Virus record (IMG/VR): IMGVR_UViG_3300020165_000007
Location: 186,001-250,000 of that record
Strand: one strand, 5' to 3'
Length of the DNA: 64,000 nucleotides
The position numbers and the translations under genes are program-made. This document shows positions 7,336 through 61,274 of this stretch, one piece after another. The notes beneath the pieces were generated by a model. The model did not search any database. It had not been told where the DNA came from and worked only from the letters and a program-made list of their open reading frames with translations. The first letter of the stretch is position 1; every line of letters begins with the position of its first letter.

Positions 7336-7980
7336 TCATAGAGGTGGTTTTGTCCCTGTTGGTTTTGGTACTGTACCTCCAATATGCGCAATCGAGTCTA
7401 AATAACGTAATGCTTTAGACAACTCTTCAACCCTATACTTTAAATCAGGAGGAGTCATACTCATTAGTTTTCCCTTTGAAGTTCCACTATTCCTAACTTC
7501 TTCTACAAAATCTGGTAGTCTAGATTTTTTAACACGGTTTATAAAATCTTTGAATTCAGTTTTACTTAAATACAACATGTCTTTTAACCATTTTAAGGGA
7601 AGATAGTCACCATCAATTTTTTGAGTTTGTATTAAATCACTTACGATATCAAAAGGTTCTTCGTATTGGTCTTCATATCCAGTACCTTTGACAGTACTAT
7701 TCCAAAAACCACCTATGTTATTCAATATACTACGATTTGTTTCATTAGTATTCATAACTTGATTCACCATTTCCTTATTACGAATATCAAGTAACTCTTC
7801 CCTAGTTTTATTTAAGATAGGTAAAACTTCAGATAATGATTGTTGAACAGTTTTCATTTTTGATAGTTGGTCTAATTGGTCACCCACTTTAAACTCATCA
7901 TTAGATTGTTCATCAATCAAACCATACATCTCTTGTATGTTTCTTTTTTCTTCTTCGGATAATAATATTTGTCGTCCCAT
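7336..7980 (-). CDS. Hypothetical protein with N-terminal leader, flanked by 60-bp direct repeats
   Basis: MGRQILLSEEEKRNIQEMYGLIDEQ; TATTTAT 7998-8004. Confidence 0.75.
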   Translation of the reverse strand: MGRQILLSEEEKRNIQEMYGLIDEQSNDEFKVGDQLDQLSKMKTVQQSLSEVLPILNKTREELLDIRNKEMVNQVMNTNETNRSILNNIGGFWNSTVKGTGYEDQYEEPFDIVSDLIQTQKIDGDYLPLKWLKDMLYLSKTEFKDFINRVKKSRLPDFVEEVRNSGTSKGKLMSMTPPDLKYRVEELSKALRYLDSIAHIGGTVPKPTGTKPPL

Positions 7981-8005
7981 AGTATTATTGTTTACCAATA
8001 AATAT

Positions 8006-8066
8006 CCAATTTTTCCAAAAAATTTTAATCAATAAAAAACCCCTCCGTATTGGAGAGGGTCTTATT
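8006..8066. repeat. ~60-bp direct repeat copy B
   Basis: Near-identical to 7265-7324; overlaps the last codons of the 8025-8660 gene. Confidence 0.9.
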
Positions 8067-8660
8067 CCAACCTTCATACGCAATGGCTGTAGTACGTTCA
8101 AGTACTTCTGCAAAGTATTCTTCATTATCGTTAATTAAATCAACCATTACTGCCCTTTCATCTTCCCACCAATTATCAGTCTTTAAATTATTTCTCATCC
8201 ACTCGTTTTCAGACAGTGTTATTAAATAACGAGTTAAGTGTAATGATTCATGAGCCAAAATTCTGTTAATATATCCTGGTGATGATGCTCTTTGCACATT
8301 TATAAATTCAAATAGTTGGTCCCTATAAAAATTGGTTAAACCACCAATATATGCATCATCCATTTCCGTCCTTCCTTCAGATTCCATTTTGGTTATGTGT
8401 TCCTCAGCACCTTCTCTAGTTAGACCTGCAATTTCATTAGTACCAAAAGCATCAAAAATAGATAAACTACTATCCCCAAAAATTAAATGATAAGGTTGTA
8501 ATTTAATGTCCTTTTTATCTATAACATCAAATACACCAACGGTAACTAATTCATGTAGTAAAACACCTGTTTTTTTGGGTAAAGAAATGGACTTACTGAT
8601 AGATTTTTGTTCTCTATCTTCCAACTCTTCTTTTAATACTTTTCGGATTAATTCTTTCAT
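8025..8660 (-). CDS. HExxH (zincin-like) putative metallopeptidase with N-terminal leader
   Basis: ILAHESLHLT...NEEYFAE; leader MKELIRKVLKEE; TATTTAT 8665-8671. Confidence 0.65.
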   Translation of the reverse strand: MKELIRKVLKEELEDREQKSISKSISLPKKTGVLLHELVTVGVFDVIDKKDIKLQPYHLIFGDSSLSIFDAFGTNEIAGLTREGAEEHITKMESEGRTEMDDAYIGGLTNFYRDQLFEFINVQRASSPGYINRILAHESLHLTRYLITLSENEWMRNNLKTDNWWEDERAVMVDLINDNEEYFAEVLERTTAIAYEGWNKTLSNTEGFFID

Positions 8661-9259
8661 ACAAATAAATACCAAATTTTCTCAAAAATTTTATAAACAA
8701 TTTTTTCAGGATTCCCATACAAATTTCATTTAGGCTATTGAACCCCCTTTTGACCCCCAAAACCCCCCAGGGGGAGGGGGGATACGGGACCCCATACAGG
8801 AGGGGGGGACCCCATAGGGGGGTATATAGGGGGGTTCTTAGGTAAACTCCATATGGGTCCCCCCTTAGTGTATGTTTTTCTATGGGAGTCATGTCAGGAC
8901 AACTACATATACAAATATAATAGGGGGAAGTTATGAACAGACAATATGTCAGGTGTTAATAACTATAGGGGGAATTGTTTGGTATTGTCAAATATTATTC
9001 GTATCTTTATGTTGACGCTCTGGAGTTTGGTAGGGGGAAAGTATAAGGCAGGTTGGAGTATACTCGGTCCCCCTCGAACTTGTGATGGTTACACCACGAA
9101 GTTACAACAATCTTTTTTAATACACAACTTGTTTCTTAATTATTTTTGCCGTATATTTGTATTGACGCTTCAGATTTAGATAGGGGGAAAAATAAAGCAT
9201 CAACCTAAGTTACGGCGAATTAAACTAATATCCAAATATTTATTGTTAAATTATTCTAT

Positions 9260-9649
9260 ATGGAACAAGATTATTTCAAGACTCTCCCCTCAGGTTACCT
9301 TGAGTATATTGATAAGTTGATGAACAACTTGGTTGTGGGTAATCACATGAGAGCTAATTGGAGTACTGAATGGGAAATACGTTTGGATGATAAGAATGGT
9401 AATCCCGTATTTTCTATCTACGGTGATGTAGGTAGTGACTCCCCCATATATAGAATCATTTATTCCCCTCCAGCTTTCTTATTTAATATGGTTCCCATGG
9501 GGGGTGAAGGTCATCAGTTAGAATTCATGACTCAACTATATGAGAAGTATAATATTGAAGAGTTTGTTAATAACTTCTTTGAAAAGAGGAATGAAGATAT
9601 AGATATCATTGGTCACCATAGGGGGTTTGTCAAGAGGTCCGTCTTTTAA
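9260..9649 (+). CDS. Hypothetical protein, paralog of 10455-10856
   Basis: Shared LP..YLEYIDK, FLF.MVPM, N.DID motifs. Confidence 0.75.
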   Translation: MEQDYFKTLPSGYLEYIDKLMNNLVVGNHMRANWSTEWEIRLDDKNGNPVFSIYGDVGSDSPIYRIIYSPPAFLFNMVPMGGEGHQLEFMTQLYEKYNIEEFVNNFFEKRNEDIDIIGHHRGFVKRSVF

Positions 9650-10060
9650 TAGGGTTTTATTTTATAACTTGTTCATAACTAATTCCTCCTGTTGATATCA
9701 TTAGGGGGAATTGTTGATAACTTTTTATGTCATTTTATTTGGTTTTGTCAAAATGTCATGTGGACTTTGCTCACAGCACAATCCCTTTGGAGGGTTTTGT
9801 ATTAGTATCCCCCCTCATATTTTCCAGCTAATAATAAATAAATCGATGATTTCATCGGCAGAATCCCCGATTTTCTTTAGTTCCCCCTTTTCTAAATGTC
9901 CATTCTGAGTGTATTAAAAGGGGTATATAATTTCCAGATAAAAAGGTGCATTATAAAGGGGGTGTGGGTGAGACGAAGTCCTATAATCCCCTCCAACGTT
10001 TCCCTATCCCCAATTCCTTTAGAAACCTGACAAAATGTCCATGTAAATAGACTTTCTTAA

Positions 10061-10090
10061 GTGGTAAAATGTGGTAGAAAGTGGTGTAAA
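10061..10090 (+). promoter_or_regulatory. Three 10-bp tandem GTGGT repeats (MraZ-box-like)
   Basis: GTGGTAAAAT-GTGGTAGAAA-GTGGTGTAAA. Confidence 0.5.
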
Positions 10091-10404
10091 AATCCGAAGG
10101 ATTATGTATTACTTATGAATACATTTTCGTATATGGTTTTCCTTTTATAAAACCTCTTAGTAAGTATGTCTTTAAAGTCTCTGAGGGGGAAGACTTCTTC
10201 GGTTATTATGGGGGGAATGTAACTATGAACGAAACATAACGACCCGTGTAACGGGGAGTGGTTCACGAAGTGAAATGTATAGTGAGTAGTTACATTTACT
10301 CCATAATAATATCATTCTATATAAGTTATAGAAAAGTTTTATTGGTATCATCACACTAATTCTAATAGTTATTAGTTTCTTGGTATCTTAGAATCGTCCA
10401 CGTA

Positions 10405-10433
10405 GTGGCTAGTTGTAATCCCCTACCCCTTTT
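10405..10433 (+). repeat. Dispersed motif GTGGCTRGTT-N-AATYCCCTACCCCTTTT copy 1
   Basis: Also at 11810-11839 and 13019-13050. Confidence 0.85.
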
Positions 10434-10454
10434 GTTTTTATTAGTGAGTCTAAG

Positions 10455-10856
10455 TTAATAGTTAAGGGCTGCCCTTACTACAGGAGTCTTAAATGGTAGG
10501 TCTATATCTGCGTTCTGTCTTTCGTAGACATCATCAATAGGTTTCATAAAATGTTTTAAGAATATCTGTGTAGTAAAGACTGTTTGTTGTTCCTTACTCA
10601 TGGGTACCATATGGAATAGAAATATTTTGGAACCGTAGAATACAAAATACGTTTCTTGACTAACATTTCCCTGAACACCGAAGACCAAATCATTACCATG
10701 GACTATTTGACAATCAAAAGAATCATCCCATGTGGGTATCTCATTAACCTTTACCTCACATTCACTAACCATTTTATCTATATATTCTAAATAAGATGGT
10801 GGGAGAACAGTTAATGGTTCAAAATCATACTCACTTCTACCTAACCAATTACCCAT
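10455..10856 (-). CDS. Hypothetical protein, paralog of 9260-9649
   Basis: LPPSYLEYIDKM, FLFHMVPM, NADIDL. Confidence 0.75.
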   Translation of the reverse strand: MGNWLGRSEYDFEPLTVLPPSYLEYIDKMVSECEVKVNEIPTWDDSFDCQIVHGNDLVFGVQGNVSQETYFVFYGSKIFLFHMVPMSKEQQTVFTTQIFLKHFMKPIDDVYERQNADIDLPFKTPVVRAALNY

Positions 10857-10977
10857 AGTTTAATTTATTTAATAATAAGTATTTGGTATCCCCTAATTAT
10901 TTTAGTTAGTCCCCATTTTATGACATATATCAGCTATAAATTATGACTGATGTATTCTTTCACCGATATTTATTAGT

Positions 10978-11148
10978 ATGAGTGATTTATTATTTTATGT
11001 GTTGGTTTCTTTGGGTATTATAATATCCCTTGTATTGGTAATTAAGTTAACAATGAATCTTTTATTTAAAGTGGAGTATTACCACGATTGGAAAGATAGA
11101 GACGAGAATATGGAACCTAAGATTAAGAAACGTTACGTAAAACGTTAA
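10978..11148 (+). CDS. Small membrane protein (56 aa)
   Basis: MSDLLFYVLVSLGIIISLVLVIKL...; TATTTAT just upstream. Confidence 0.55.
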   Translation: MSDLLFYVLVSLGIIISLVLVIKLTMNLLFKVEYYHDWKDRDENMEPKIKKRYVKR

Positions 11149-11789
11149 TTCCCCTGCTTCTTACACAGTTTGTTATCTATTACTACTGTGTTTTCGGTAA
11201 TATTGTATTTGGATAGTATTTCGAATACAACCCTTTCCATATCTTCTCTTGGTATCTCTAAATCACTACAAAGAGAACTATTTGATTCTATATACACTGT
11301 AAGTTTCCCCTCTGATTCCCATGCTACGGGATATATTCCGAAATTATATAAACCGTAAAAGTAATCTGATGTCATATCTAAGTTATATTCAGATATAATC
11401 TTTTGTACAATCTCTTCTGTTATTGATTGGAACTTTACACTCATCTCCGTCCATTTCTTTCCGTCTATAGAATCCCAGTCATAGTATGTTTCGATAATTA
11501 AGTTTGGTGCCCCTAAGTATTTTTTGATATCTTCTATATTGGCCGATTTCCATATTGTATCTACATACTGTGGGTCAAAATTTGGTGATAATGGATTTAG
11601 TTTATCTAAGTCAGGTTTGATTTCTATTGTTACGAGTGTGGCTCGCTTATTTTCTCTCCCCGAAAAGTACGCGTTATTGTGACCTAAGTATGCTTCGTAA
11701 TCTAAAATCCCTTTCGCATATAATGTACCGAACAGTTTCTTTACTGTTTCGAATAGTTGTACTTCCTCTTTAGAATATCCTATTTCCAT
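11145..11789 (-). CDS. Hypothetical protein, paralogous family with 13075 and 15530 genes
   Basis: DLDKLNPLSPNFDPQY...KKYLG. Confidence 0.7.
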   Translation of the reverse strand: MEIGYSKEEVQLFETVKKLFGTLYAKGILDYEAYLGHNNAYFSGRENKRATLVTIEIKPDLDKLNPLSPNFDPQYVDTIWKSANIEDIKKYLGAPNLIIETYYDWDSIDGKKWTEMSVKFQSITEEIVQKIISEYNLDMTSDYFYGLYNFGIYPVAWESEGKLTVYIESNSSLCSDLEIPREDMERVVFEILSKYNITENTVVIDNKLCKKQGN

Positions 11790-11809
11790 TGATTAATATC
11801 TTTCATTGT

Positions 11810-11839
11810 GTGGCTGGTTTAAAATCCCCTACCCCTTTT
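11810..11839 (+). repeat. Dispersed GTGGCT...CCCCTACCCC motif copy 2
   Basis: GTGGCTGGTTTAAAATCCCCTACCCCTTTT. Confidence 0.85.
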
Positions 11840-11906
11840 TTTAATAATCCTAATTATAAATATACTTTTATTTGATTATCTTTAACTTATCATTATATTA
11901 GTTAAT

Positions 11907-12482
11907 ATGATTTTTACTGAGTTATCACACGCACATATCACCTTTGTAATAGGTTTACCAGGTAGTGGTAAAAGTTACCTATTAAATTACCTAAAAGAAA
12001 ACCCTTTTATCGAACCTGTCGTTTATGATGATTGGTTAATAGTATACGAAAATGATTGTGGTAATGAAAATTTTAATTGTGACAGTAGATATCCTGAATT
12101 AATAGAAAACTTGAATAATAAGATACCTTGTATTATTTCTTCTATTAAGTTTTTGGAGCCTGAATTTTTAAATAGTTCCATAACCACATTAATTGAAGAA
12201 ATTAATGATTTAAAAATAGAATATTTATACTTTGATAATGACATAGAATCATGTAAGTTTAATGTGAAATGTAGAGATATTGAGTTGGGTGGTTATTGGA
12301 AACCTAATAATGAAGGAATTTTATGGTATTATGGTACTATATATAATAATAAACCTTTATATCTATCTGAGTTATCTAATATTGAGAATCTGTCATCCAC
12401 TTATGAAATTCCTACAAAATATACTCCGATAAAGATTGAACGTAATAAGAATATAACGAAATTACCTTTTGGATATGAATAA
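11907..12482 (+). CDS. P-loop NTPase/kinase (AAA_33-like)
   Basis: VIGLPGSGKS Walker A, VYDD. Confidence 0.65.
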   Translation: MIFTELSHAHITFVIGLPGSGKSYLLNYLKENPFIEPVVYDDWLIVYENDCGNENFNCDSRYPELIENLNNKIPCIISSIKFLEPEFLNSSITTLIEEINDLKIEYLYFDNDIESCKFNVKCRDIELGGYWKPNNEGILWYYGTIYNNKPLYLSELSNIENLSSTYEIPTKYTPIKIERNKNITKLPFGYE

Positions 12483-27238: not shown

Positions 27239-28060
27239 AGGACGCTGAGATTACACGTTTGAATGACTCGTCTTTTGTGGGATTATTATTACTTTTTCCC
27301 CACTTATCCACCCCATTGACAGGGGTATCGAATCAGTGTCGGTTACTATCGGTAACCACTCGTATCGTTGATAACTACTCAACCGTTACTAAAATCTCTT
27401 AAGACTTGCGGTCTCATAAAGGGTCGGCCAACCCACGAGTTGTTTCACAATCGACATCCTTAGACTTGCGGTCTGAAGGAAAACTTCGTTGACAAAGGTC
27501 CGAAGTATTAGACACCTTTCGTCATCAACGCTCGAAGACTCTTGCTTTTCTAATTGATTTTAGATAAACAACATGGATTTATGAAAGATGCGCTTCGAGA
27601 GAAGTTCTATACCTTTGGAGTACAGAATGCTTCACACCTCTCTGTAAGTCTGTCAACTTACGGTAAGTTAGGACCACGTCGACTTGTCGTCTCGGAGACC
27701 CCTCATACTGGTACTCAGCCCTACAACACCTGACAGGGTGTGTCGAACCGTCACCTGTAGCTTTTCCTATTGATATCACTATCTCAACTCTGATATTCCA
27801 CGGACTCAGAGTGGTTTCATCCCTTTAGCAGTTGCCCTTAGGGTTTTGACCGTAGCCACTTTGTTTAGTTGTCAGAGTAAACTCTGCGGATATCTGAGAG
27901 TTGCTCAACACTCTTCAATCCCTTTAGTCCTGTTACCAGGGTTATCTAACGACGCTAAACCGCCGATGACTAATAACTCACTGTGATTTTAAAAAAAGGG
28001 GGTTAATCTTTTTTGATATAAACTCGATTCAGTGAGTGTTCGTCATTATTATTTCAAAGA
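27239..28060 (-). ncRNA. Large (~820 nt) structured non-coding RNA, GOLLD-like
   Basis: GC-elevated, no credible ORF, dense hairpins with GNRA loops on minus strand, duplicated AGACCGCAAGUCU, 3' end GUGUAAUCUCAGCG; host-type promoter upstream, terminator downstream. Family call is from recalled size and motifs. Confidence 0.75.
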
Positions 28061-60458: not shown

Positions 60459-61274
60459 TTACAAATAATCAAAAAGTATACTACTCTCGTTTCTTAGTTT
60501 TCTTAAAGCCTTTTCTTTAATTTGTCTAACTCTTTCCTTTGTTAGGTTAAAATCTTTACCTATTTCTTCTAAAGTTTTAGGTGTTCCGCTTATTCCGTAA
60601 TAATCTTTAACTATTACTTGCTCTCTTTTATCTAAAGTTTTCATAATCGCAAATAATTTACCTTTTAAAGCCTTATCATCATTAAAAGTTGCGTCAGGAC
60701 TGCTAGAGTTTTCATTCTCAATTAAATCAAGTAACGTATCACCTTCCTCATTGATGTGATTATCTAAACCTGTAACTTTCGGTAAAGAAGTGAATTTTGC
60801 ATCCATCTCTTTATTTGTCTTTTGACACTCTTTTTTAGCCTTATAAAGGTCTTGGACTACATTTACCGGTAGACGGATTGTACGAGAGTTCTCATTTAAT
60901 GATTGCAAAATTGATTGCTTAATCCACCAAACCGCGTAAGATATAAATCTTAGGTTCTTAGTCCAATCAAAGTTTTTTATCGCCTTCATGAGTCCGTAAT
61001 TACCCTCAGCGATTAAATCACTTAAGTCTAACCCCTGATTTTGGTATTGTTTGGCCACTGTAATAACAAACCTTAGATTACCTTGTAAAAGTTCTTGGTG
61101 AATTTCTTCTTTTTGTTTTTCAGTACATTCGACTGAACATATGATTTTTGCCAATTCTTTTTCTCTTTCTGGCGTCATAACTTTAATCTTACGGATATCT
61201 TTAAGATACATTTGTATCTCATCTTGATTGATAGGATTGTGATTGTTCATTAAATTAAGTTTTTGAGTATTCAT
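60459..61274 (-). CDS. RNA polymerase sigma factor, RpoD/SigA family (Bacteroidota type, no region 1.1)
   Basis: NLRFVITVAKQYQNQG, DLIAEGN.GL.KA, RFISYAVWWIKQSI, RTIRLP, LTKERVRQIKEKALRKLR. Confidence 0.93.
   Translation of the reverse strand: MNTQKLNLMNNHNPINQDEIQMYLKDIRKIKVMTPEREKELAKIICSVECTEKQKEEIHQELLQGNLRFVITVAKQYQNQGLDLSDLIAEGNYGLMKAIKNFDWTKNLRFISYAVWWIKQSILQSLNENSRTIRLPVNVVQDLYKAKKECQKTNKEMDAKFTSLPKVTGLDNHINEEGDTLLDLIENENSSSPDATFNDDKALKGKLFAIMKTLDKREQVIVKDYYGISGTPKTLEEIGKDFNLTKERVRQIKEKALRKLRNESSILFDYL

What the first reader, a model, noticed from the sequence alone, without database searches (positions are those of the whole stretch)
8921..9721. Iteron-like TAGGGGGAA x5 interleaved with DnaA-box-like GTTATNAACA sites
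Seen: exact TAGGGGGAA at 8921, 8966, 9031, 9181 and 9702, all on the plus strand. GTTATNAACA or its complement at 8930, 8954, 9565, 9670 and 9712, twice abutting the 9-mer. Known: the DnaA box is TTATNCACA (one mismatch), and the T5 injection-stop region also holds DnaA boxes and palindromes. Inference: a host-DnaA-assisted origin, a DnaA-titrating decoy, or an injection/terminal control region.
Basis: partly seen in the sequence, partly recalled or inferred. Interest (0 to 1): 0.65.

Follow-up and report, generated by a model that had tools for sequence, protein, structure and literature searches.

The report
DnaA-box control locus in jumbo phage
The repeated G-rich 9-mers and DnaA-box-like 10-mers are real and mark a conserved, nearly gene-free control region of a marine T4-like jumbo phage, most likely a hub of early promoters carrying host-DnaA-type binding sites, not a classical iteron origin.

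Summary
TAGGGGGAA occurs 5 times on the + strand in 8921-9710, against 0.65 expected and one other copy in the 270-kb genome. GTTATNAACA has 14 genome copies, 5 of them here.

The motifs lie in a 1.65-kb gene-poor locus (about 8664-10310). In relatives from about 20 metagenomes its DNA is about 90% identical, while its only ORF is 60-66% identical in protein and the genes on both sides are swapped.

The 9-mer is not an iteron. Relatives carry 1-5 copies at irregular spacing, and 4 of the 5 copies here belong to two duplicated promoter-like modules.

Two composite sites are conserved:
- Site 1 (8921-8939) is 9-mer plus TTATNAACA, present in 20 of 21 loci, varying mainly at N. It sits in the spacer of a predicted leftward Bacteroidetes-type promoter.
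- Site 2 (9670-9721) lies upstream of a rightward promoter-like module that leads into a covariation-supported structured RNA (10175-10309).

In 10 of 18 relatives site 2 carries canonical DnaA boxes (TTATCCACA). The DnaA link is therefore partly supported. An origin function is unproven, and a terminal or injection role is not supported.

Best reading: a DnaA-box-governed early transcription hub. Main rival: a transcription-primed or DnaA-assisted origin.

The parts
8664..8740 (-). Conserved leader or translation-start region in front of the leftward gene (8025-8660). The gene behind it differs between relatives.
   Evidence: Largely invariant in 21 distinct loci (about 50 of 77 columns unchanged), while the gene to its left is replaced.
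8740..8865 (.). Block of G5-7 and C5-6 runs separated by short A/T steps. It is probably part of a long 5' leader of the leftward transcript.
   Evidence: Run positions are conserved in all relatives, in two allelic forms. RNA-library contigs cover 8713-8876, including one from a DNase-treated library. The fold energy is no better than shuffles, z = -0.2.
8912..8919 (-). Predicted -7 box (TATATTTG on the minus strand) of a leftward Bacteroidetes-type promoter, P_left.
   Evidence: Exact match to TAnnTTTG, with a TTG 22 nt upstream. The TTTG is conserved in relatives. The transcription start is not mapped.
8921..8939 (+). Site 1: 9-mer copy 1 abutting box A (GTTATGAACA). It lies in the spacer of P_left.
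   Evidence: Present in 20 of 21 distinct loci. Box A varies at N (G 11, C 8, T 1) and, in 4 loci, at its last base.
8954..9011 (+). Promoter-like module P_R1: box B (8954-8963), 9-mer copy 2 (8966-8974), TTTG (8978-8981), TTGTCAAA, and a -7-like TATCTTTA (9002-9009).
   Evidence: Paralogous to the module at 9690-9772 (repeats D6 and D12). Box B and copy 2 are variable or deleted in relatives.
9012..9150 (+). A 150-bp unit holding 9-mer copy 3 (9031-9039). Its G-run can pair with CCCCC at 9069-9073.
   Evidence: Present in only about half of the relatives. It is bounded by the 41-nt repeat 9000-9040 / 9150-9190. The hairpin was predicted, with weak z.
9152..9189 (+). P_R2: perfect -7 box TATATTTG (9152-9159), then a leader with 9-mer copy 4 (9181-9189) at about +15 to +25.
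   Evidence: Copy 4 is allele-specific; other relatives have an unrelated A/T-rich leader there. An RNA contig starts at 9186.
9260..9649 (+). ORF of 129 aa, an orphan family present as 1-3 tandem paralogues in relatives.
   Evidence: It has 36 homologues, all from this lineage, at 60-99% identity. No Pfam or PHROG hit. Model pLDDT is 84 with no convincing fold match, best Z 5.5.
9670..9721 (+). Site 2: three direct TGTTNATA(A/T)C 10-mers (9670, 9690, 9712; 20 and 22 nt apart), with 9-mer copy 5 (9702-9710) between the last two.
   Evidence: Box E (TGTTNATAA) is present in 18 of 18 distinct segments, and a G4-5 run in 16 of 18. In 10 of 18 the left part is replaced by two canonical DnaA boxes in direct orientation.
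9722..9772 (+). A/T-rich stretch (about 77% A+T) with a promoter-like module P_R3: TTTG 9738-9741, TTGTCAAA, and a -7-like GGACTTTG 9762-9769.
   Evidence: Conserved in nearly all relatives and paralogous to P_R1. It could equally serve as an unwinding element. Neither role has been tested.
9977..10174 (+). Conserved non-coding stretch that may pair with the hairpin at 10181-10202 to close a larger RNA domain.
   Evidence: 91% mean identity in 17 loci. The consensus fold pairs 9977-9994 with 10183-10197, but these columns hardly vary.
10175..10309 (+). Structured RNA element: a hairpin followed by a long branched stem. It is single-copy and specific to this phage lineage.
   Evidence: MFE -52 kcal/mol, z = -5.8. 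In 19 sequences, 47 pairs are 99.9% paired, with a covariation score of 0.101 against 0.056 in shuffles (0 of 500 as high) and at most 0.046 when slid. No Rfam match. One copy in the genome. Not found in 151 Flavobacteriaceae genomes.

Best explanation
The motifs are cis-elements of a conserved, almost gene-free control locus (about 8664-10310) in a lineage of T4-like jumbo phages of marine Bacteroidota. The locus is a hub of divergent, host-RNA-polymerase-type early promoters. One promoter fires leftward through a G/C-run leader into an exchangeable gene. Two duplicated promoters fire rightward into a fast-evolving small ORF family. One more leads rightward into a conserved structured RNA. 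The 10-mer is a DnaA-box variant (TTATNAACA), and each conserved copy is paired with a G4-5 run. Host DnaA, or a protein of the same specificity, most likely binds at site 1, inside the leftward promoter, and at site 2, 40-110 bp upstream of the RNA promoter. This would tie early phage transcription to the host's initiator. The five exact 9-mers in this genome arose by duplication of promoter modules and are not an iteron array. Shown: the enrichment, the conservation pattern, the canonical boxes in relatives, the module duplications and the RNA structure. Inferred: the promoters and their start sites, DnaA as the binding protein, and the regulatory outcome.
For: Enrichment and uniqueness of both motifs. 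The non-coding DNA is about 90% identical where the ORF is 64% identical in protein and the flanking genes differ. Site 1 is kept in 20 of 21 loci with variation mainly at N; box E is kept in 18 of 18; canonical TTATNCACA boxes occur in 10 of 18 at the homologous place, against 0.13 per kb background, in two different arrangements. Exact TAnnTTTG boxes are placed so that site 1 falls in the promoter spacer and copies 3 and 4 fall at about +15. P_R1 and P_R3 are paralogous box, G-run, TTTGG and TTGTCAAA modules. The phage has no RNA-polymerase-independent signature: it is T4-like with its own sigma-family gene, so early genes should use host-type promoters. RNA-library contigs cover the locus. 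No Rep-like protein lies nearby.
Against: No transcription start site is mapped. The RNA evidence is contigs only and cannot exclude DNA carry-over. The window's own locus has no canonical DnaA box. Whether TTATNAACA binds any DnaA is unknown, and my attempt to define a flavobacterial oriC box set was inconclusive. The -7 elements of P_R1 and P_R3 are imperfect. The role of the G-run is unexplained. DnaA boxes next to an A/T-rich stretch fit an origin equally well.
Confidence: 0.4

Rival explanations
1. The locus is a phage replication origin. DnaA-type boxes next to the A/T-rich 9722-9760 stretch open the duplex. Alternatively or additionally, transcripts from the early promoters form R-loops at the G-runs and prime synthesis, as at T4 oriF, oriG and oriE or in ColE1. 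The 3' structured element would serve as primer or priming signal.
For: The locus combines canonical DnaA boxes in relatives, three direct 10-mers about two helical turns apart, an adjacent A/T-rich stretch and local transcriptional divergence. G-clusters lie just downstream of promoters. The non-coding DNA is single-copy and strongly conserved. T4 oriE likewise combines an early promoter, short direct repeats and small ORFs (PMC3016281), and this phage is T4-like.
Against: There is no skew step at the locus after correcting for gene strand. The helicase, PolB and terminase genes lie 75-160 kb away. No initiator-like protein was found. This genome has no canonical box. A T4-type replisome does not need DnaA. 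No DnaA-trio or 13-mer pattern was seen by eye.
Confidence: 0.27
2. The 9-mer and 10-mer are operators for a phage-encoded or other host DNA-binding protein, not DnaA. The resemblance to DnaA boxes in this A/T-rich DNA is partial.
For: The window's boxes all carry A instead of the conserved C at position 6. The G-run always accompanies the box, which suggests a composite site.
Against: Perfect TTATCCACA recurs at the same place in several lineages and in two arrangements. The known Bacteroidetes SOS motifs do not fit (PMC8565304). No candidate binding protein was identified next to the locus.
Confidence: 0.15
3. The G-runs act at the RNA level, as stems with nearby C-runs in leaders, hairpins or terminators, and the DNA motifs are by-products.
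For: Copy 3 pairs with CCCCC at 9069. Copy 5 is the right arm of a 32-nt palindrome that follows the ORF. A G-run forms the hairpin at 10181-10202.
Against: Copies 1, 2 and 4 have no conserved C-run partner. The folds of 8735-8880 and 9012-9125 are no better than shuffles. Box conservation with variation mainly at N argues for DNA recognition.
Confidence: 0.1
4. The locus is a terminal, injection-stop or packaging (pac) control region.
For: Several metagenome contigs end within 0-160 nt after the RNA element.
Against: The locus lies at different internal positions in contigs of 164-304 kb. The contig ends coincide with the boundary between conserved and variable DNA, which is an assembly effect. 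The terminase gene is 74 kb away.
Confidence: 0.03

Closest known systems
DnaA-box-regulated promoters (dnaA, nrd, mioC; lambda pR stimulation by DnaA)
   Same: Short DnaA-type boxes are placed within or just upstream of promoters, and a phage precedent exists in lambda (from established knowledge; lambda replication papers are listed).
   Different: The host here is Bacteroidota and the phage is a T4-like jumbo phage. The boxes in this genome carry A at position 6. Each box is coupled to a G4-5 run. Nothing has been tested biochemically.
[quoted passage not shown]
   Same: A T4-type phage, an early-type promoter, short direct repeats and small ORFs inside the region. The role of the T4 repeats is also undefined (PMC3016281).
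   Different: The repeats here are 9-10 nt and mostly unevenly spaced. ORF129 has no PHROG or Pfam link to RepEA or RepEB. No replication data exist.
Iteron origins with DnaA boxes (P1 oriR, F ori2, pSC101, RK2 oriV)
   Same: DnaA boxes beside short direct repeats and an A/T-rich stretch.
   Different: There is no Rep gene. The repeats are shorter than 17-22 bp. Copy number and spacing are not conserved.
PeSL promoter/stem-loop cassettes of T4-type phages
   Same: Repeated early-promoter modules border exchangeable genes, and insertions or deletions lie exactly between repeats: the 150-bp unit, 1-3 ORF copies and swapped neighbour genes (PMC2839356, PMC4122927).
   Different: This is one unique locus, not a genome-wide dispersed family; the module motifs occur nowhere else in the genome. 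It also carries DnaA-type boxes and a long structured RNA.
T5 first-step-transfer or injection-stop region
   Different: The locus is not terminal and the phage is not T5-like.

Membership tests
Iteron-type origin | Three or more direct repeats of one unit at regular, helically phased spacing | tested here: not met
   The 9-mers lie 45, 65, 150 and 521 nt apart. Only the three 10-mers of site 2 are regular, at 20 and 22 nt.
Iteron-type origin | Repeat array conserved in relatives | tested here: not met
   Relatives carry 1-5 exact 9-mers. Copies 2, 3 and 4 are lineage- or allele-specific.
Iteron-type origin | Adjacent gene for a Rep-type initiator | tested here: not met
   ORF129 and the conserved 214-aa neighbour have no Pfam or PHROG hit and no winged-helix or Rep fold match. 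The second model is of low confidence.
DnaA-box cluster (oriC / datA / DARS / DnaA-regulated promoter) | Canonical TTATNCACA boxes | tested here: inconclusive
   There are 0 in the window's locus. At least one occurs in 10 of 18 distinct relatives at the homologous site, against 0.13 per kb background.
DnaA-box cluster (oriC / datA / DARS / DnaA-regulated promoter) | Conservation of the eight specified positions, with freedom at position 5 | tested here: met
   Box A reads GTTAT[G/C/T]AAC[A/T] in 20 of 21 loci. Box E reads TGTT[G/C]ATAA in 18 of 18.
DnaA-box cluster (oriC / datA / DARS / DnaA-regulated promoter) | Binding by the host DnaA | not testable with these tools
   The host is unknown. 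The proxy search in one Flagellimonas genome gave no oriC box cluster.
Bidirectional replication origin (compositional signature) | Step in strand-corrected GC3 or AT3 skew at the site | tested here: not met
   A step at genome position 195.5 kb does not improve the fit, and the best change-points lie elsewhere. This is weak evidence, because T4-type phages need not show skew.
Bacteroidetes sigma-A promoter | -7 TAnnTTTG with a TTTG/TTG about 19-22 nt upstream | tested here: met
   Exact boxes at 8912-8919 (-) and 9152-9159 (+). The boxes at 9002 and 9762 are imperfect. Start sites are not mapped.
T5-like terminal / injection-stop region | Location in a terminal repeat at a fixed genome end | tested here: not met
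   The locus is internal and at different offsets in 164-304-kb contigs.
Known RNA families (Rfam 15) for 10175-10309 | Covariance-model match | tested here: not met
   No hit with E up to 1 in 7500-12000, and none at gathering threshold in the window apart from GOLLD elsewhere.

The most novel reading that the evidence does not exclude
The locus is the early replication origin of a T4-like jumbo phage. It recruits the host initiator DnaA through conserved boxes, and it uses a phage-specific structured RNA of about 330-560 nt, transcribed from the adjacent promoter, as primer or regulator. This would be a hybrid of oriC-type and ColE1/T4-type initiation not described for large lytic phages.
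Probability: 0.15. Interest if true: 0.75.

Novelty: new variant of a known kind. Interest (0 to 1): 0.5.

Why it matters
Almost nothing is known about how large phages of marine Bacteroidota start their programme. This locus is the most conserved non-coding DNA found here in a widespread lineage of roughly 270-306-kb phages, seen in at least 14 studies' runs. It gives concrete, testable sites: two DnaA-type composite operators, four predicted early promoters and a new structured RNA. If host DnaA binds, it would show a lytic jumbo phage reading or hijacking the host replication initiator. If it does not, the sites define a new operator and binding-protein pair. The locus also marks a hot spot where early genes are exchanged.

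Tried and rejected
- **Phage-record search.** BLAST of the locus against 50,697 phage records found no match. The helicase is at most 27% identical to any isolate.
- **RNA and tRNA scans.** Rfam and tRNA scans of the locus found nothing.
- **Sigma-70 promoter scan.** It found no more sites than shuffles do and is not suited to Bacteroidota.
- **Left-flank gene as anchor.** A 74%-identical relative (L012) has no such locus at that place, so this gene is not linked to the locus.
- **Promoter motifs genome-wide.** TTGTCAAA-type and TTGACGCT motifs do not recur elsewhere, so they are not a general phage promoter consensus.
- **9-mer as ribosome-binding site.** The mini-ORF after copy 1 is not conserved.
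- **Metatranscriptome runs.** Only contigs were available, so neither strand, transcript ends nor levels could be read.
- **ORF129 and the 214-aa neighbour.** No family or fold lead emerged for either.
- **Host proxy.** The CHU_C protein found no genome relatives. One Flagellimonas genome showed no cluster of TTATCCACA and no boxes beside dnaA. This line is inconclusive and was dropped.
- **Bacteroidetes SOS operator.** The motifs differ.
- **RNA element in bacteria.** It was not found in the 151 Flavobacteriaceae genomes searched.
- **Moraphage link.** The 'moraphage' lineage (PMC12619734) may be the same group of phages, but I could not verify this.

Full report
**Observation.** The window is bases 186001-250000 of a 270,383-bp IMG/VR virus contig (33% G+C, estimated 88% complete).
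- TAGGGGGAA occurs exactly five times, all on the + strand, at 8921, 8966, 9031, 9181 and 9702. The expectation is 0.65, and no shuffle reached five. The rest of the genome has a single further copy.
- GTTATNAACA occurs 14 times in the genome, five of them in this locus. That clustering never arose in 20,000 random placements.
- The five 9-mers are not independent events. Copies 3 and 4 sit in a 41-nt direct repeat, and copies 2 and 5 sit in a 26-nt repeat.

**Setting.** The motifs lie in a 1.8-kb stretch (8661-10454) with one ORF only, 9260-9649 of 129 aa. The stretch lies between a leftward gene (8025-8660) and another leftward gene (10455-10856).
- The stretch holds 21 of the genome's 151 runs of five or more G or C.
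- The phage has a T4-type Gp23 capsid gene, a family-B DNA polymerase, a DnaB-like helicase, a large terminase and a sigma-70-family gene. All lie far from the locus. It has no DnaA gene.
- A CHU_C type IX secretion domain next door points to a Bacteroidota host.
- No isolate is close.

**Relatives.** I reached about 35 loci in three ways: the small ORF, a repeat pattern, and a pattern from the RNA element. These include contigs of 240-304 kb.
- In all of them the same gene-poor locus is present.
- Its non-coding DNA is about 90% identical where the ORF protein is 60-66% identical.
- The genes on both sides differ from phage to phage.
- The ORF occurs in one to three tandem copies, and a 150-bp unit between the two copies of the 41-nt repeat is present in about half of the loci.
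- The locus is thus a conserved non-coding cassette inside a zone of gene exchange. It resembles the repeated promoter cassettes (PeSLs) that mediate shuffling in T4-type phages (PMC2839356, PMC4122927), although its module motifs occur nowhere else in this genome.

**What is and is not conserved.**
- The exact 9-mer count is 5 here and 1-2 in most other lineages.
- Copy 2 varies or is deleted. Copy 3 exists only where the 150-bp unit exists. Copy 4 belongs to one of two leader alleles.
- Two composites are conserved throughout.
- Site 1 is 9-mer copy 1 abutting GTTATNAACA (8921-8939). It is present in 20 of 21 distinct loci, and its variation falls mainly on the N (G, C or T), with a change of the last base in four loci.
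- Site 2 ends with a G4-5 run followed by TGTTNATAA (9702-9720). That box is present in 18 of 18 distinct segments.
- The part of site 2 to the left exists in three forms. In this genome and its near kin it is two more direct TGTTNATA(A/T)C 10-mers, spaced 20 and 22 nt. In two other forms, 10 of 18 segments together, it is a pair of canonical DnaA boxes in direct orientation, TT(A/T)TNCACA, often the perfect TTATCCACA, either 29 or 11 nt apart.
- Canonical boxes occur at 0.13 per kb in all fetched loci, so two arrangements at one spot are not chance.
- The window's own locus has none.

**Promoters (inferred).**
- Exact matches to the Bacteroidetes -7 element TAnnTTTG lie at 8912-8919 on the minus strand and at 9152-9159 on the plus strand, each with a TTG or TTTG about 20 nt upstream.
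- The first places site 1 in the promoter spacer. It would send transcripts leftward through the G/C-run block into the exchangeable gene.
- The second places 9-mer copy 4 at about +15 to +25 of the ORF leader. Its duplicate at 9002 does the same for copy 3.
- The box, 9-mer, TTTGG and TTGTCAAA module occurs twice, at 8954-9010 and 9690-9772.
- RNA-library contigs from four studies cover parts of the locus, including 8713-8876 in a DNase-treated library and a contig starting at 9186. They are contigs only and show neither strand nor ends.

**RNA element.**
- At the right end, 10175-10309 folds on the + strand at -52 kcal/mol (z = -5.8).
- In 19 distinct sequences all 47 pairs are kept (99.9% of cells). 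Three pairs show double compensatory changes and six show G-U-compatible single changes. The covariation score is 0.101, against 0.056 in shuffles (0 of 500 as high) and at most 0.046 when partners are slid.
- It has no Rfam match and is single-copy in the genome. It was not found in the 151 Flavobacteriaceae genomes searched.
- A consensus fold of 9747-10309 suggests a larger domain closed by 9977-9994 pairing with 10183-10197. Those columns barely vary, so this is unproven.

**Tests of the origin idea.**
- No step in strand-corrected GC3 or AT3 skew occurs at the locus.
- No Rep-like or winged-helix protein is encoded in or beside it. ORF129 gave a confident model without a fold match, and the conserved 214-aa neighbour gave a poor model without an informative match.
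- The 9-mer spacing is irregular.
- On the other side, DnaA-type boxes, an adjoining A/T-rich stretch (9722-9760), local divergence of transcription and G-clusters downstream of promoters resemble transcription-activated origins. T4 oriE itself combines an early promoter, short direct repeats of unknown role and small ORFs (PMC3016281).
- The origin reading therefore stays a serious rival.
- A terminal or injection role is unlikely, because the locus lies at different internal positions in long contigs. The contig ends that cluster just after the RNA element coincide with the conserved-to-variable boundary.

**Verdict.**
- 'Iteron' is the wrong label for the 9-mer.
- The DnaA-box idea gains real support from relatives.
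- I judge the most likely function to be a DnaA-box-governed hub of early promoters that also drives a new structured RNA (confidence 0.4).
- A DnaA-assisted or transcription-primed origin comes next (0.27).
- The remaining weight goes to another binding protein (0.15), RNA-level roles of the G-runs (0.10) and a terminal or packaging role (0.03).
- The decisive data would be binding assays, 5'-end mapping and replication profiling, none of which I could run.

Noticed in passing
window 27242-27642 (-): Full-length GOLLD RNA (RF02032, 299.8 bits, E 8.6e-85) inside a 1.6-kb gene-free gap. This marine Bacteroidota-type jumbo phage therefore carries a giant ornate RNA.
   Followed up: no
window 10175-10309 (+), possibly 9977-10309: A new covariation-supported structured RNA with no Rfam family. 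It is single-copy and was not found in 151 Flavobacteriaceae genomes.
   Followed up: yes
window 8740-8865: Dense block of G5-7 and C5-6 runs in a 33% G+C genome. It is conserved in two allelic forms, has G-quadruplex or i-motif potential, and its function is unknown.
   Followed up: partly
window 9260-9649; L024:8315-9151; L032:4001-5344: An orphan 129-aa ORF family evolves faster than the surrounding non-coding DNA and varies from 1 to 3 tandem paralogues (24-32% identity to ORF129). Possibly an early host-takeover or anti-defence protein.
   Followed up: partly
L038:820-984: One relative carries a tandem duplication of the 26-nt hairpin that precedes the RNA element, and a 73-nt deletion upstream.
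   Followed up: no
window 8025-8660 and 10314-11126: The genes directly left and right of the conserved locus are replaced by unrelated genes in relatives, for example a Peptidase_C92 or an epimerase. Several assemblies break just after the RNA element. This looks like a gene-exchange hot spot.
   Followed up: partly
window 60879-61088 (-): A sigma-70-family gene (Sigma70_r2, E 2e-17), with a weaker second match at genome position 103.8 kb. The phage probably redirects host RNA polymerase later in infection.
   Followed up: no
genome 165263-166448 (outside the window): Another gene-free gap of about 1.2 kb with isolated G5-6 runs. A tRNA-like T-arm sequence lies at genome position 176.4 kb.
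   Followed up: no
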